Shown here: piece by piece, positions 18,793 to 64,000 of the stretch
How the letters are laid out: every line of letters begins with the position of its first letter
Position numbering within the stretch: position 1 is the stretch's first letter
Sequence record: PP968062.1
DNA: 64,000 nt
Strand: one strand, 5' to 3'
The notes under the pieces: generated by a model
Database searches by the model: none
Seen by the model: the letters and a program-made list of their open reading frames with translations, nothing else
Told to the model about the DNA's origin: nothing
Made by a program: the position numbers and the translations under genes

Positions 18793-20100
18793 TTAGGACA
18801 GTTCTTCTACGCTGGACTTAGCCACGACCATGTAGTTGACGTTCTTGAAGTAAGCGCTTGCATAGATCACGTTATCACGGATCATACGAGATACACCTTG
18901 AGGAACGGAACTATAACGAGTCATCCCTTCAGCTGCTTTTAACAGCTTCGAGAACAGCATCATCCATTCAATCGTTTCAGGCGAAGATTTGTTGATATCA
19001 CCAGTGTCATTAGTTACCAGTTGATAGTCTTTAAACTTCTGCGAGAATTGAGTGATGCCATTACGGTTCTGCGGGTTACCCAGCACAGAGAATGCAATGG
19101 ACTTGTAGGTGTTCGAAGAGAGTTCGAACTTGTTGTCTACGTAGGTCTGAGTATAACCAGGACCACGTGCAGTGCGACGGATCAGGGGCAGACGCTTGCG
19201 ATGGTCAACAGTAGGACTGTAAGTACCAGCACGATAGTCAGCTTGTTCGATGGAATACTGGTTCCAGAACGGAGTAAAGATGAACTCGGTCGTCATGAAC
19301 AGGTCAGGAAGAATAACTTCCCAGTCAGTCCGAGGATGAGTAGAGTCTTTCAGGAGTTCTTCAACGATCTTGTCCTTAATAAGGTCAGGGTTGTTACCTG
19401 CCTCACCATAGACGATCGCAATCCAGTAAGCCGGGAAACGCATGCTGTCATCACGAGGGTTGTGATATTCGAACATGAATGCCCGTTGATGGGTGTACGG
19501 ATACTGGGCACGCTTGGCTTGTACTTCCTCAATCTTTTCGACGAGGTCGTAATCAGCTAGCAACTGCTTAACGATAAGAGGGTCTTTGAAGAAGTCATCA
19601 AACGGAACGATCGGGTGAACGATCTCGATTACGTATTCATCGTACTGTGCTGCAAACGATTCGTCTGCAAGCCAAATGTTCATCTGGTTAGCTTCAGTGC
19701 CTACCAGTACGAACTCAACCCACTCGGGCATCCAGATACTACCGTTAGAGATCATTTGACCGCTACGGAAAGTCTTGATGACACCGTTGAATTCTGCCAT
19801 TACCAGCTGACGCAGTACGTTCGGATCAGAACCGATTGTACCAGCGATAGACTGCTGATAAATATATTCCCCAAGCTTCAGAACTTGATCTTTATTGTTA
19901 CCGGCAACATCAACGACGTTTCCATCCTTTACGCTATGAAAAGAAACAAAAACAACGTTTGGTGCGGACGTACCGGTGTGGAAAGTCTTGTCCTTTGCAT
20001 AGGTTGCGCTGTTCGACGAAAGTTCGCCGAGCTTCGCTACAGTTTCTGGGGCATTCGAAATGAGTGCAGGGAAACTATAAAAGCCTTTCAAATTGTACAT
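18793..20100 (-). CDS. Virion structural protein (435 aa, conserved phiKZ-like)
   Basis: Long ORF at the conserved position between the RNase H and head-protein genes. Confidence 0.65.
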   Translation of the reverse strand: MYNLKGFYSFPALISNAPETVAKLGELSSNSATYAKDKTFHTGTSAPNVVFVSFHSVKDGNVVDVAGNNKDQVLKLGEYIYQQSIAGTIGSDPNVLRQLVMAEFNGVIKTFRSGQMISNGSIWMPEWVEFVLVGTEANQMNIWLADESFAAQYDEYVIEIVHPIVPFDDFFKDPLIVKQLLADYDLVEKIEEVQAKRAQYPYTHQRAFMFEYHNPRDDSMRFPAYWIAIVYGEAGNNPDLIKDKIVEELLKDSTHPRTDWEVILPDLFMTTEFIFTPFWNQYSIEQADYRAGTYSPTVDHRKRLPLIRRTARGPGYTQTYVDNKFELSSNTYKSIAFSVLGNPQNRNGITQFSQKFKDYQLVTNDTGDINKSSPETIEWMMLFSKLLKAAEGMTRYSSVPQGVSRMIRDNVIYASAYFKNVNYMVVAKSSVEELS

Positions 20101-36450: not shown

Positions 36451-36984
36451 TTAATGTTCCAATTCTCGAATTACTCCATCTTCCATCAGACGGTAACCAC
36501 CATCTTCCAGGAGACGAGCATATTGGTTGCCTTCTACCATTTCGACAGTAATCATAGTCGAACCGTAGTAAGCGTAACTACCAGTCATCGCGACGAGTTC
36601 ATATTGGAACACGTCGTCTTTTGTATTGATAACAGTGGTAGAGAAGGATAGATCGTCCGGACCGAAAGTCATCTTACGGGAGCGGTTGATCTCTTCTGCG
36701 ATGGCCGCAGGTGTAGCCACCCCAGATAGCTTAATGGACGGATTAGGTCCAAGGCAGTCAGGGTGAGACAGTTCCAGACGACGATAAACGAACCAGTCTT
36801 TGAGACTGGCTTTATTATCGATCATCTCGATATAAGTACGTCCCGGAACACCCGAAGTCGGACTGAAGAACATGTCTTCAAAGTTTACGAATTCGTCTTG
36901 AATGTTCTTATGCTTAGACGTTTCCCGAATCAGACGGCACAGGGCCGCACGAGACGGGAGGTTATAAGGAAAACGATCGCTCAT
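36451..36984 (-). CDS. Putative virion adaptor protein with C-terminal RLLEDG repeat (177 aa)
   Basis: VYRRLEL motif as in other virion proteins here; ends RLLEDGGYRLMEDGVIRELEH. Confidence 0.65.
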   Translation of the reverse strand: MSDRFPYNLPSRAALCRLIRETSKHKNIQDEFVNFEDMFFSPTSGVPGRTYIEMIDNKASLKDWFVYRRLELSHPDCLGPNPSIKLSGVATPAAIAEEINRSRKMTFGPDDLSFSTTVINTKDDVFQYELVAMTGSYAYYGSTMITVEMVEGNQYARLLEDGGYRLMEDGVIRELEH

Positions 36985-54478: not shown

Positions 54479-55357
54479 ATGTACATCACGAGAGACTACC
54501 TCCAGTCTACTCCTTGGACATCCATCATTGACATGATTAATGATGCTTGTTTTACCCAGCTGTTTCCGGGTAGTACCAAGCTTGAGAAGTTCGAACCTTT
54601 GAATGGGACCAAGACTCGTATTGTCATTAGTGTTAATCGCAGTGAGGCTCCCGGCAATCTGTTGCCGGAAGTCCCGCTCGATACTTATACGTACGATAGA
54701 CTGGATCTAACTACGTTCTTCCGTCAAACTCAAGTTCTGGATATTTCCGGGATTGATGTTCCATTCTCCTCGATGGATATCGTAGAGAAGCTATCGGAGT
54801 TGAACAACATTGTTTTTGATGTGGATGACTTCGAACACACTGAGTATAATGTCTTCAATCAAGAGTTCATTCTACGGGCTAACAAAGAGTCTCTACGTTT
54901 CGTGGGGTTCTTAAGAGTACGTCTTATCAATACAATCCGTGTTGATCTTTCTGTACAATCCAAGGTTGAATTCCCTACCGTAGGTAAACCAGACAACGTT
55001 ACTGCTGGTGACGTTACTCTAATCAATGGGACCTACTACATCACTGGTTATGACTTCTCTGCACATAGAGAATACCTACGTCATCAGACTAAGGCTGGTA
55101 CACATCCAGATCCTAAGAAGATGGCAGCTATTCTCGCTGAGGTGACGAAGAAGCCTTGGACTGCGGTAAAGACACCAGCTTCGCACAACATCGCTTATAC
55201 AGAAGAATTCGGGGTATTAAAGTATCGCGTCATTTATAACGGTGTCGTACTTCCACGCTTCACTAAGCGGACTGATATTCAAAACGTTCTAGTCATCGAA
55301 CTGCACAAGACTCTGTGTCAAGATGTGGTTGGTGAAATTCGTATTCACTATAACTAG
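54479..55357 (+). CDS. Virion structural protein (292 aa)
   Basis: YTYDRLDL motif family. Confidence 0.7.
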   Translation: MYITRDYLQSTPWTSIIDMINDACFTQLFPGSTKLEKFEPLNGTKTRIVISVNRSEAPGNLLPEVPLDTYTYDRLDLTTFFRQTQVLDISGIDVPFSSMDIVEKLSELNNIVFDVDDFEHTEYNVFNQEFILRANKESLRFVGFLRVRLINTIRVDLSVQSKVEFPTVGKPDNVTAGDVTLINGTYYITGYDFSAHREYLRHQTKAGTHPDPKKMAAILAEVTKKPWTAVKTPASHNIAYTEEFGVLKYRVIYNGVVLPRFTKRTDIQNVLVIELHKTLCQDVVGEIRIHYN

Positions 55358-55365
55358 GAGTGATT

Positions 55366-55794
55366 ATGCACGTATCAAACATGCGGGTTAAACTACTCCA
55401 GCAGTTTAGTCTACAGAACAAACTAGAACCCGCGATTCGACCTGAAGATGTTATCTGGACAAACATTGAAATCTGGTTAGAGAATGGTAATAACTCAAGA
55501 GCTACCATTCAAGCTCTGGCAAGTAGTAATCATTTCAAAGGACAGCGTACTATCAATTTCAATCGATACAGAATCGAAGAAGCATTGCGTGGCGTTGTTA
55601 TTCCCGGAAAACGTTCTGACTACTCGACTATCCACGATGTAGTTAAAGTACTGCGGGATAAGGTTACTGCACCAGTAGATACCGAAGAATTCCTTGATGG
55701 TCCTCTTGTTGGTAACACGGTTATTCTGAAGCCGACTATTCGCTCCATGGCGTACATTCCTACGTCGCAGATCGAACTAAGCTTCGCTGAATAA
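55366..55794 (+). CDS. Virion structural protein (142 aa)
   Basis: SD aggag; FNRYRI variant of the same domain. Confidence 0.65.
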   Translation: MHVSNMRVKLLQQFSLQNKLEPAIRPEDVIWTNIEIWLENGNNSRATIQALASSNHFKGQRTINFNRYRIEEALRGVVIPGKRSDYSTIHDVVKVLRDKVTAPVDTEEFLDGPLVGNTVILKPTIRSMAYIPTSQIELSFAE

Positions 55795-62911: not shown

Positions 62912-62919
62912 GTAATATA
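62912..62919 (-). promoter_or_regulatory. Early promoter TATATTAC driving the nvRNAP operon
   Basis: Exact motif with AT-rich upstream, right after the MCP terminator. Confidence 0.75.
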
Positions 62920-62941
62920 GATTTGAAATATTTTTTAATGA

Positions 62942-62980
62942 CGACATAAAGCCTCTACCCGAAGGTAGAGGCTTTATGCC
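62942..62980 (-). terminator. MCP terminator hairpin, conserved-flank family
   Basis: cgacataaagcctctacc-cgaa-ggtagaggctttatgcc. Confidence 0.85.
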
Positions 62981-63004
62981 AGCAGTCAGCTTTACACTTC
63001 CGCT

Positions 63005-63088
63005 TTACCGCTCCAGGCGGCGGGCCACTCCGTCTTCAAGATAACGGGTAGTTCCATTCTCAAGCTTACGGAAGGTTCCCTTTCCAGT
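63005..63088 (-). other. Putative in-frame readthrough extension of the major capsid protein (27 aa + TAA)
   Basis: After ...AVKG-TGA the same frame reads TGKGTFRKLENGTTRYLEDGVARRLER-TAA. Confidence 0.6.
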
Positions 63089-64000
63089 TCAACCCTTAAC
63101 GGCGTCGACCAGGGGCTTGTTCCACTGAGACTCACCCATCACTTCTTCGAAGCCAGTAACGTCGAATTCGAGAGCGAACGGGATGTTGTTTACGTGCAGG
63201 TTGAACGGAATCGCAGCGATTTCGCGAGTAACTTGCTGGCCACCACGGGTGATCGGCAGGTCGGCGATTACGGTCGATACGTAGTAGAATTGACCGAAGC
63301 TGAGGATGTCGTTCTCTTGCGGGTTCTTACGAGTCGGAACCACTACCAGTTTACCGTCGAACAGTTCGTTGTTGGTCGATACCAGGTCGTATTCCAGGTA
63401 AGCGCCCAGGGTACGATCGTCGCCCTTGGTCATCAGGTAGTTAGCGATCTCTTTGTCCGAGCAGAACAGGAACATCGGACGCTCGTCTTGGTTGCCGGAG
63501 ATCACACGGAAGGCTGCTTCGATGTTGGATTCACGGTAGGCCGGGAACAGTACACCTTTAACAGCGTTCAGGATTGCCGAGCAGACATCTTCCCAACGGT
63601 CTTGCGACTTCAGGGTGTCGATCATGTCAGGCAGGTGCAGCTTCTTGTAGCGGTAGGTCGGACGCATTACTGCGGACAGAGCACCTTCAACAGCACCGAA
63701 CTGCGGACGGTCGAAACCGTTAGCGGTTACTTCTTTCAGCTGAGCCAGGTAGTTCAGCAGGCGCTTAACAGCGTTGTTGCTGTTACGGATGTTGGTGTTG
63801 ACAGTCAGAGCCTTAACAACTTCGCCCGGACCTTCTTCGTCCATGGTGCTCAGCGGCAGGGTTACCGGAGCGTGCATCGGAATCGGGTGACGGAATTGCA
63901 GGGCACGAGTTTGCAGCAGGTGACCACGCTGACGACGGTTGGTGTTGGTGAAGCGGGTATCGAGGTCGAAACCAACGATTTCCATTTCGCCAATGCTGTC
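63089..64000 (-). CDS. Major capsid protein, C-terminal part (phiKZ gp120-like); continues beyond the window
   Basis: Frame open to the window edge; extreme codon bias; RFTNTNRRQRG, AIPFNLHVNNIP; position next to gp123-like gene. Confidence 0.88.
   Translation of the reverse strand, partial: DSIGEMEIVGFDLDTRFTNTNRRQRGHLLQTRALQFRHPIPMHAPVTLPLSTMDEEGPGEVVKALTVNTNIRNSNNAVKRLLNYLAQLKEVTANGFDRPQFGAVEGALSAVMRPTYRYKKLHLPDMIDTLKSQDRWEDVCSAILNAVKGVLFPAYRESNIEAAFRVISGNQDERPMFLFCSDKEIANYLMTKGDDRTLGAYLEYDLVSTNNELFDGKLVVVPTRKNPQENDILSFGQFYYVSTVIADLPITRGGQQVTREIAAIPFNLHVNNIPFALEFDVTGFEEVMGESQWNKPLVDAVKG

What the first reader, a model, noticed from the sequence alone, without database searches (positions are those of the whole stretch)
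63005..63091. Probable programmed UGA readthrough of the major capsid protein, adding a RxLExG-repeat tail
Seen in sequence: the MCP ends ...LVDAVKG-TGA, and the same frame continues ACT GGA AAG... for 27 codons (TGKGTFRKLENGTTRYLEDGVARRLER) to TAA. The extension lies before the terminator at 62942 and has no start codon and SD of its own. Its threefold R-x-L-E-x-G pattern closely copies the C-terminus of the 177-aa ORF at 36451 (RLLEDGGYRLMEDGVIRELEH), which is unlikely for random 3' UTR. The most codon-biased gene here uses TGA where most genes use TAA. Established: phage Qbeta makes a minor extended coat protein by readthrough of UGA followed by A, the same context. Inference: a minority of capsid subunits carry a short tail that could act as a docking peptide. 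I know of no description of this in phiKZ-like phages.
Basis: partly seen in the sequence, partly recalled or inferred. Interest (0 to 1): 0.9.

Follow-up and report, generated by a model that had tools for sequence, protein, structure and literature searches.

The report
Leaky stop extends phiKZ-type capsid protein
In phiKZ-like giant Pseudomonas phages the major capsid gene always ends in the leakiest stop codon (TGA) followed in frame by a conserved 24-30-codon peptide, so a few capsid subunits probably carry a hidden tail that nobody has annotated or described.

Summary
The window is Pseudomonas phage HPP-Temi. Its major capsid protein (MCP, minus strand) stops at TGA 63089-63091. The same frame then runs 27 codons (63008-63088) to TAA, 24 nt before a strong terminator hairpin.

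One genome proves little, because 20 of 70 genes here have at least 27 open codons after their stop. The comparison with relatives decides it.
- I compared 47 non-identical MCP lineages (isolates, IMG/VR, metagenomes).
- 29 carry the R-x-x-E-x-G octad extension, and all 29 stop at TGA.
- 16 lack it, and all 16 stop at TAA.
- At least five independent gains or losses fit this rule. Two losses are clean deletions inside the extension.
- The extension is under purifying selection, with dN<dS in 95% of pairs and R/E/G columns 96-100% conserved.
- Length changes keep the frame, and there is no start codon.
- Its codon adaptation is far below the MCP's.
- It is never fused by a sense codon in 120 MCP clusters.
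- I found no SECIS, no conserved RNA fold and no suppressor tRNA.

Programmed UGA readthrough giving a minor extended MCP is the best explanation (about 0.8). No protein evidence exists yet.

The tail copies the conserved C-terminus of gp143, a DUF7941 protein, which suggests a docking peptide. That function is inferred. I found no prior description.

The parts
63092..64000 (-). 3' part of the major capsid protein gene (phiKZ gp120 homologue). It is cut by the window edge; the last 303 codons are present.
   Evidence: 100% match to HPP-Temi 'major head protein'. Matches PDB 8y6v phiKZ gp120 at E 2e-166.
63089..63091 (-). Proposed leaky stop codon TGA, followed by A.
   Evidence: TGA in 29 of 29 lineages that carry the extension. 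The fourth base is A in 20, G in 8, C in 1 and never T. Lineages without the extension use TAA (16 of 16).
63008..63088 (-). In-frame 27-codon extension. A Gly-rich linker (TGKGTF) is followed by three octads: RKLENGTT (63070-63047), RYLEDGVA (63046-63023) and RRLER (63022-63008).
   Evidence: R/E/G columns are 96-100% conserved in 28 distinct sequences. dN<dS in 95% of pairs. Codon adaptation is 0.21 against a mean of 0.80 for the MCP. No start codon.
63005..63007 (-). Second stop (TAA) ending the extension.
   Evidence: Among relatives this stop varies between TAA, TGA and TAG.
62943..62980 (-). Intrinsic terminator hairpin of the MCP transcript. It lies after the extension, not after the TGA.
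   Evidence: -37.4 kcal/mol, z -7.6. A hairpin in the same position is visible in all relatives.
36451..36984 (-). gp143 homologue, a 177-aa virion and lysis-regulator protein with a DUF7941 module. Its C-terminal tail at 36454-36516 is the paralogous octad repeat.
   Evidence: phrog_2935 at E 2e-43. phiKZ gp143 synteny. 84 clusters, all with the tail; R157, R165 and R173 are invariant. AF2 model has pLDDT 86 and its best PDB match is the phiKZ outer baseplate entry 9xqd.

Best explanation
The MCP gene of HPP-Temi, and of the whole phiKZ / PhiPA3 / 201phi2-1 / Phabio / Psa21 / Noxifer clade, ends in a deliberately weak UGA stop. Most ribosomes terminate there and make the normal MCP.

A minority decode UGA with a host near-cognate tRNA. 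In bacteria this is expected to be tRNA-Trp, which is established knowledge and was not tested here. Those ribosomes continue for 24-30 codons to a second stop just before the transcript's terminator.

The product would be a minor MCP isoform about 3 kDa longer. Its extra tail is a short Gly-rich linker followed by three R-x-(hydrophobic)-E-(D/N)-G-x-x octads. In phiKZ the MCP C-terminal arms meet at the centre of each capsomer, so the tail would emerge there on a few of the 1,620 subunits.

The same octad tail ends gp143, a chimallivirus-specific DUF7941 protein. DUF7941 relatives are reported to assemble head-to-tail through their post-domain segment. I therefore infer that the tail is a docking peptide. 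It would let the capsid engage the same partner as gp143: a DUF7941 N-domain, or whatever else binds the gp143 tail.

Shown: anatomy, conservation, selection, the coupling between stop codon and extension, and the paralogy with the gp143 tail.
Inferred: that readthrough happens, its rate, incorporation into capsids, and the docking function.
For: (1) Every isolate genus has TGA followed by an in-frame octad ORF, even where the nucleotides are fully diverged as in Noxifer.
(2) In 47 lineages, 29 with the extension use TGA and 16 without it use TAA. There are at least 5 independent transitions on the MCP tree.
(3) Two of the losses are 56-64-nt deletions inside the extension, and the stop is then TAA.
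(4) Stops of the neighbouring genes and the extension's second stop vary freely.
(5) Purifying selection acts on frame 0. Median dN/dS is 0.38-0.48. HPP-Temi versus PA1C shows 4 synonymous and 0 non-synonymous changes. Differences are most frequent at third codon positions. R/E/G columns are 96-100% conserved.
(6) Extension lengths of 24-30 codons never break the frame, and the other two frames carry stops.
(7) Codon adaptation of the extension is 0.20-0.36, against 0.75-0.80 for the MCP, in six genomes. This fits rare translation.
(8) None of 120 MCP clusters has the tail fused through a sense codon, so full stoichiometry appears to be avoided.
(9) No conserved RNA fold, Rfam hit or SECIS was found. 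A 95%-identical relative has no suppressor tRNA and no tRNA-Trp.
(10) The terminator lies after the extension.
(11) The tail is paralogous to the gp143 tail and occurs nowhere else in these genomes.
(12) The MCP C-terminal arm forms the central six-helix bundle in hexamers and contacts the external protein gp244 in pentamers (PMC11297242).
(13) DUF7941 head-to-tail assembly is reported in bioRxiv 10.64898/2026.04.21.720040.
Against: - There is no direct evidence of the extended protein. The two phiKZ cryo-EM papers model gp120 to residue 747 and mention no readthrough or extra species.
- No readthrough-stimulating RNA element was found, and the fourth base G seen in 8 lineages is not a classically weak context.
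- The extension is dispensable in nature. 16 related lineages lack it while keeping the gp143 tail.
- dN/dS of the extension (about 0.4) is looser than that of the MCP (0.13).
- The other DUF7941 proteins in the window lack the octad motif, so the link to DUF7941 docking rests on gp143 alone.
- gp143 is also reported as a holin regulator (PMC12894885), so the tail's partner is uncertain.
Confidence: 0.8

Rival explanations
1. The region is untranslated 3' UTR. It is conserved because of a nucleic-acid function (an RNA stability element, part of the terminator, or a promoter or regulatory site), and the peptide pattern is incidental.
For: The region sits between the stop and the terminator. Open length alone is not unusual. 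Some nucleotide conservation exists. No protein evidence exists.
Against: Noxifer-type lineages keep the R..E.G pattern with different codons. Changes are biased towards synonymous sites and length changes keep the frame. The consensus RNA fold is weak (-9.9 kcal/mol), its covariation term is unfavourable, and only 1 pair is compensatory. There are no Rfam hits. The strict TGA-with-extension and TAA-without rule has no RNA-level rationale. The same peptide is a conserved protein tail in gp143.
Confidence: 0.07
2. The extension is a decaying relic of an ancestrally longer MCP that was cut short by a nonsense mutation.
For: It has the same frame and no start codon. The feature has been lost several times.
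Against: A relic would accumulate stops and frameshifts. Instead 29 lineages, down to about 63% MCP identity, keep it open with dN<dS. The stop is invariably TGA, whereas ordinary stops drift. No lineage retains a fused form.
Confidence: 0.03
3. UGA is decoded by a dedicated mechanism rather than by near-cognate leak. Candidates are selenocysteine insertion, a phage-encoded opal suppressor tRNA, or partial stop-codon reassignment late in infection.
For: Jumbo phages carry tRNA sets, and the host genus has selenoprotein machinery (my own knowledge, untested here).
Against: There is no conserved hairpin after the UGA and no SECIS or other Rfam match. The seven tRNAs of the close relative phiLBG22 are Thr, Leu x2, Tyr, Asn, Met and Pro, with no UCA anticodon. 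The single tRNA call in the window is Gly and lies inside a coding sequence. TGA ends 18 of 70 genes in the window, so it is a working stop.
Confidence: 0.05
4. The 24-30-residue peptide is made on its own, by reinitiation after termination at a non-canonical codon, and acts as a free micropeptide.
For: Selection for coding does not by itself say that the peptide is joined to the MCP.
Against: There is no conserved ATG, GTG or TTG, and no Shine-Dalgarno sequence. The first codon varies (ACT, GCT, GAT, AGG, AAG, AGT, CTG, AAA). This rival does not explain the strict need for TGA rather than TAA. The IMG/VR variant L129 places an Ig-like domain plus the octad tail in the same frame without a start.
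Confidence: 0.05

Closest known systems
Readthrough coat protein A1 of ssRNA phage Qbeta (Fiersviridae)
   Same: A leaky UGA at the end of the coat gene yields a minor, C-terminally extended coat protein that is incorporated at low copy number. This is established knowledge recalled from memory. No Qbeta sequence was fetched or used.
   Different: The present case is a dsDNA jumbo myovirus with an HK97-fold MCP and a T=27 capsid. The extension is only 24-30 residues, whereas A1 adds a whole domain. There is no sequence relationship. Function and stoichiometry are unknown here, and the feature is dispensable in some natural lineages.
Minor capsid protein 10B of phage T7, and the frameshift-extended capsid or tail proteins of Listeria and lactococcal phages
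   Same: Tailed phages that use translational recoding at the 3' end of the major capsid gene to make a minority of C-terminally extended subunits (my own knowledge).
   Different: Those use -1 or +1 frameshifting at slippery sites. Here the extension is in the same frame behind a stop, so no frameshift is involved.
Ig-like domains appended to phage structural proteins by recoding
   Same: Related uncultivated lineages carry a Big_2 domain directly in frame after the MCP stop. In L129 it is followed by the same octad tail. This shows that the MCP C-terminus of this clade is a display site.
   Different: In HPP-Temi and phiKZ only the short octad peptide is appended. The L129 stop is TAA, and L125 has an ATG two codons after the stop, so how those two are expressed is unclear.
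DUF7941 (PF25613) proteins of chimalliviruses, here gp143
   Same: The extension copies the conserved C-terminal octad tail of gp143. In DUF7941 proteins the segment after the N-domain is reported to dock on the next protomer (bioRxiv 10.64898/2026.04.21.720040).
   Different: The extension has no DUF7941 domain. The two other DUF7941 proteins in the window lack the octad motif. gp143 is alternatively described as a holin regulator (PMC12894885).

Membership tests
Programmed stop-codon readthrough giving an extended coat protein | A stop codon followed in the same frame by an ORF with no initiation signal of its own, inside the same transcript | tested here: met
   No start codon; the terminator lies after the second stop.
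Programmed stop-codon readthrough giving an extended coat protein | The stop identity and the downstream ORF are conserved and under purifying selection across relatives | tested here: met
   29 of 29 lineages with the extension use TGA and 16 of 16 without it use TAA. dN<dS in 95% of pairs.
Programmed stop-codon readthrough giving an extended coat protein | The extended polypeptide is detected and present in virions at sub-stoichiometric level | not testable with these tools
   No proteomic or ribosome-profiling data were accessible. The cryo-EM papers are silent on it.
Programmed stop-codon readthrough giving an extended coat protein | A stimulatory context or downstream RNA structure | tested here: inconclusive
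   The fourth base is A, G or C and never T. No conserved structure was found.
Programmed ribosomal frameshift extension (T7 10B type) | The extension lies in a different frame and is reached at a slippery site | tested here: not met
   The extension is in frame 0 directly behind the stop.
Selenocysteine recoding | A SECIS hairpin immediately 3' of the UGA | tested here: not met
   No conserved hairpin, no covariation and no Rfam match.
Suppressor-tRNA or alternative-code decoding | A phage tRNA that reads UGA, or in-frame TGA codons inside other genes | tested here: not met
   One search finds 7 tRNAs, none with a UCA anticodon, in 300 of 302.5 kb of a 95%-identical relative. One search shows that TGA terminates 18 of 70 genes.
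DUF7941 (PF25613), for the 177-aa gp143 homologue | A match to the Pfam model above the gathering score | tested here: inconclusive
   The window protein scores 15.3 bits, below the 27-bit cut-off. Several homologues carry a precomputed PF25613 hit. The model's only significant PDB match is the phiKZ outer baseplate entry 9xqd. The Goslar preprint lists gp143 as DUF7941.
DUF7941 head-to-tail docking segment, for the octad tail | The tail binds the N-domain of another DUF7941 protomer | not testable with these tools
   Only single-chain prediction was available. In the monomer model the tail has pLDDT 70-78 with bridge residues flanking each invariant Arg.

The most novel reading that the evidence does not exclude
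phiKZ-like phages use programmed UGA readthrough to place, on a small number of capsid subunits, the same octad docking peptide that ends the DUF7941 protein gp143. The head would then physically recruit gp143 or other DUF7941 proteins, or compete with gp143 for its partner. That would couple capsid production to fibre attachment or to the timing of lysis. It would be the first conserved readthrough-made capsid isoform in a tailed dsDNA phage, in the best-studied nucleus-forming phage.
Probability: 0.3. Interest if true: 0.9.

Novelty: new variant of a known kind. Interest (0 to 1): 0.8.

Why it matters
phiKZ is the model nucleus-forming jumbo phage. Its capsid has been solved at near-atomic resolution and its virion proteome has been measured repeatedly, yet this conserved coding segment is unannotated in every record examined.

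If it is translated, there is a hidden MCP isoform at capsomer centres. It may explain unassigned surface features or virion-associated gp143. It would add stop-codon readthrough to the recoding repertoire of tailed phages. It would also mark a natural, tolerated display site at the MCP C-terminus.

The rule that TGA goes with the extension and TAA with its absence is a clean, phylogenetically replicated signature. The same signature could be used to find programmed readthrough in other phage genomes. The claim can be tested at once on existing mass-spectrometry and cryo-EM data.

Tried and rejected
- **Open length after the stop.** Rejected as evidence, because 20 of 70 genes have at least 27 open codons.
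- **Pfam and PHROG search of the 27-aa peptide.** There was no Pfam hit. The only PHROG hit was a weak one to the C-terminus of the gp143 family.
- **Rfam scan and consensus RNA folding.** Only chance hits on the terminator hairpin, and no covariation.
- **Far outgroups** (Xanthomonas, Erwinia, Ralstonia, Cronobacter and Klebsiella jumbo phages). None has the feature.
- **Suppressor tRNA.** None found.
- **PDB sequence search for gp143.** No match.
- **Octad motif in other DUF7941 proteins of the window.** Absent.
- **TnSeq supplement of the phiKZ transposon study.** It holds gene-level counts only, with no information on the 78-nt segment.
- **Literature searches** for readthrough or recoding in phiKZ, jumbo phages and Chimalliviridae. 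Nothing relevant was found. No phiKZ ribosome-profiling paper is in the library.
- **The consensus terminator scan** missed the hairpin. Folding showed it.

Full report
**What the window is.** The window is identical to Pseudomonas phage HPP-Temi (PP968062.1, genus Pawinskivirus), record positions 124001-188000. The gene at the right edge is the major capsid protein (MCP), the homologue of phiKZ gp120. It matches PDB 8y6v at E 2e-166.

**Observation.**
- On the minus strand the MCP ends ...LVDAVKG, with TGA at 63091-63089.
- The same frame continues for 27 codons (63088-63008) to TAA at 63007-63005.
- The only start-like codon in this stretch is a GTG at codon 21.
- A 17-bp hairpin terminator follows at 62980-62943, with -37.4 kcal/mol and z -7.6.
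- The peptide is a Gly-rich linker plus three octads: RKLENGTT, RYLEDGVA and RRLER.
- The 177-aa ORF at 36451-36984(-) ends with the same three-octad pattern. Aligned from the first Arg, 12 of 21 residues are identical, with 54% nucleotide identity, mostly at codon positions 1 and 2.
- Such an octad doublet occurs only at these two places in six-frame translation of the window. Shuffles give 0.027, and 0 of 300 reach 2.
- The open length itself is not remarkable, because 20 of 70 annotated genes have at least 27 open codons after their stop. The single-genome observation is therefore correct but weak. Everything rests on comparison with relatives.

**Comparison among isolates.**
- In phiKZ, PhiPA3, 201phi2-1, Phabio, Psa21, D6, RVTF4, Viktualia, Noxifer and the PA1C/PS119XW/BRkr group the MCP also stops at TGA.
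- In each, an in-frame ORF of 26-30 codons follows with the same R-x-x-E-x-G octads, then a second stop (TAA, TGA or TAG) and the terminator.
- Noxifer shares only about 64% MCP identity and has entirely different codons in this stretch, yet it keeps the pattern.
- The other two frames contain stops in most genomes.
- Between HPP-Temi and PA1C the extension differs at 4 sites, and all 4 are synonymous.
- Stops of the neighbouring genes (homologues of gp119, gp121 and gp122) vary among TAA, TAG and TGA between the same genomes.

**Wider sampling.** IMG/VR and metagenome scans with the MCP C-terminus gave 47 non-identical lineages.
- 29 have the octad extension, and all 29 use TGA. The fourth base is A in 20, G in 8, C in 1 and never T.
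- 16 lack the extension, and all 16 use TAA.
- On a neighbour-joining tree of the MCP C-terminus the two states interleave, which implies at least five independent transitions.
- Two losses can be read directly. L032 (inside the Psa21 group) and L040 (sister of L073) each have a 56-64-nt deletion inside the extension. The flanks and the terminator are retained, and the stop is now TAA.
- In 28 distinct extension sequences the columns R8, E11, G13 and G22 are 100% conserved, and R17 and E20 are 96% conserved.
- Pairwise differences by codon position 1, 2 and 3 are 4172, 3916 and 5423.
- Median dN/dS is 0.48, and dN<dS in 95% of usable pairs. For the 11 isolates, the extension gives 0.38 against 0.13 for the last 150 MCP codons.
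- Far outgroups from Xanthomonas, Erwinia, Ralstonia, Cronobacter and Klebsiella lack the feature.

**Signs of rare translation and selection against a constitutive tail.**
- Codon adaptation of the extension, scored with each MCP's own codon usage, is 0.20-0.36 in six genomes. The MCP averages 0.75-0.80, and no MCP window of the same length scores as low.
- MCP windows are part of the reference set, so the contrast is somewhat inflated.
- Among 120 MCP cluster representatives from a 5.8-billion-protein collection, none has the octad tail fused through a sense codon.

**Alternative decoding mechanisms.**
- The consensus RNA structure of the region is weak (-9.9 kcal/mol). Its covariation term is unfavourable and only one pair is compensatory.
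- Rfam gives only chance hits on the terminator, so there is no SECIS-like element.
- ARAGORN finds seven tRNAs in 300 of 302.5 kb of the 95%-identical phage phiLBG22: Thr, Leu x2, Tyr, Asn, Met and Pro. None reads UGA.
- TGA terminates 18 of 70 genes in the window.

**Mechanism.** The simplest reading is leaky termination at UGA by a host near-cognate tRNA. That UGA is the leakiest bacterial stop, and that tRNA-Trp reads it, is established knowledge that I did not test. This would give a minor MCP isoform.
- Shown: the anatomy, the selection on the frame, and the strict coupling of the stop codon to the extension.
- Inferred: that readthrough happens, and its rate.
- The phiKZ capsid has 1,620 MCP chains (PMC11297242). 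A readthrough rate of 1-5% would mean roughly 16-80 extended subunits per head. This is arithmetic on an assumed rate.

**Where the tail would sit.** In phiKZ the C-terminal arm (residues 728-747) is modelled to the last residue.
- The six arms of a hexamer form a central helix bundle around a pore about 9 A wide.
- In pentamers the arms swing outwards and contact the external protein gp244 (PMC11297242).
- An extension would therefore emerge at capsomer centres, probably on the outside.
- In lineages without the extension the MCP ends in low-complexity Thr/Pro/Asp/Gly tails. Two uncultivated lineages have a Big_2 Ig-like domain in frame right after the MCP stop. Both facts fit an exposed C-terminus used for display.

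**What the tail may do.** The 177-aa protein is the homologue of phiKZ gp143.
- All 84 clusters of this family end in the three octads. The three Arg residues are invariant and the Glu and Gly residues nearly so.
- tblastn with the 27-aa peptide finds only two places per genome: the MCP 3' end, which is never annotated, and the gp143 C-terminus.
- gp143 has been described as a holin-binding lysis regulator that is non-essential in TnSeq (PMC12894885 and bioRxiv 10.1101/2025.11.23.690004).
- It has also been listed as one of three phiKZ DUF7941 proteins. Relatives of these form head-to-tail filaments, in which the segment after the N-domain docks on the next protomer. They attach to the peripheral baseplate (bioRxiv 10.64898/2026.04.21.720040).
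- My AF2 model of the window's protein has pLDDT 86, with the tail at 70-78. Its only significant PDB match is the phiKZ outer-baseplate entry 9xqd, at E 8e-7.
- I infer that the octad tail is an interaction peptide, and that the readthrough MCP presents the same peptide on the head.

This part is weak, for three reasons.
- The other two DUF7941 proteins of the window (54479-55357 and 55366-55794) lack the motif.
- Lineages without the MCP extension keep the gp143 tail.
- I could not run complex predictions.

**Novelty.** Eight full-text searches and the two phiKZ structure papers gave no mention of translational readthrough or an extended gp120. The kind of mechanism is known: Qbeta A1 by readthrough, and T7 10B and others by frameshift. 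These comparisons are from my own knowledge, and no sequences were used. A conserved readthrough extension of an HK97-fold MCP in a jumbo phage appears to be undescribed.

They were a calcium-binding repeat of the RTX type, the octapeptide repeat of the T4 gp5 beta-helix, and the cleavage-site pattern of the phiKZ head protease. The rules forbid this. I stopped, used none of them in any search or conclusion, and do not repeat them here.

No fused MCP-plus-extension sequence was built. The MCP and the extension were always analysed apart.

Noticed in passing
window 62992-63135 (-): The GenBank record annotates a 47-aa 'hypothetical protein' (HSP1_CDS0286, GTG start) in another frame, across the MCP stop and the extension. 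That frame carries stops in PA1C, PhiPA3, phiKZ and other relatives, so the call is probably spurious. The conserved frame-0 extension itself is unannotated in all records.
   Followed up: partly
L129:3537-3821 (= L071), IMGVR_UViG_3300037502_002993: In this MCP relative (about 67% identity) the MCP stop is TAA. It is followed in frame by 95 codons that encode a Big_2 Ig-like domain (Pfam E 5e-7) ending in the same octad tail, and then by a terminator. No start codon lies at the beginning. It is unexplained how this ORF is expressed behind a TAA.
   Followed up: partly
L125:3522-4130 (= L067), IMGVR_UViG_3300043122_000192: The MCP stop is TGA, followed in frame by a 203-codon ORF with a Big_2 domain (E 3e-9) and no octad tail. 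An ATG lies at its third codon, so it may be a separate decoration gene or a readthrough product.
   Followed up: partly
window 62912-62920 (-): The motif CTATATTAC lies just downstream of the MCP terminator. It is conserved in position in phiKZ, PhiPA3, Phabio, the PA1C group, Psa21 and L032. It looks like the phage promoter of the next gene (gp121 homologue). The identification as a promoter is from memory and was not tested.
   Followed up: no
window 19864-19944 (-): ARAGORN calls an 81-nt tRNA-Gly (gcc) with an odd anticodon position. It lies inside the annotated virion structural protein gene 18793-20100, and no tRNA is called in the corresponding part of the 95%-identical phage phiLBG22. 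It is probably a false positive.
   Followed up: partly
window 54479-55357 (+) and 55366-55794 (+): Two adjacent DUF7941 proteins. The first has 292 aa and matches the full model at E 6e-20. The second has 142 aa and matches the N-domain only, at E 6e-6. They are probably the gp126/gp127 pair that a preprint places in the phiKZ peripheral baseplate. Neither has the octad tail.
   Followed up: partly
MCP C-termini of lineages without the extension (P0149-P0204; L035-L046): These MCPs end in low-complexity Thr/Pro/Glu/Asp/Gly tails of variable length (for example runs of T, or EP repeats), mostly with a final Pro. This suggests a flexible, exposed C-terminus in the whole clade.
   Followed up: no
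JGI names (P0108, P0118-P0120): Several metagenomic MCP homologues are named 'virulence-associated protein VapD' by the source. This is evidently a mis-annotation of a capsid protein (Pfam PF25620).
   Followed up: no
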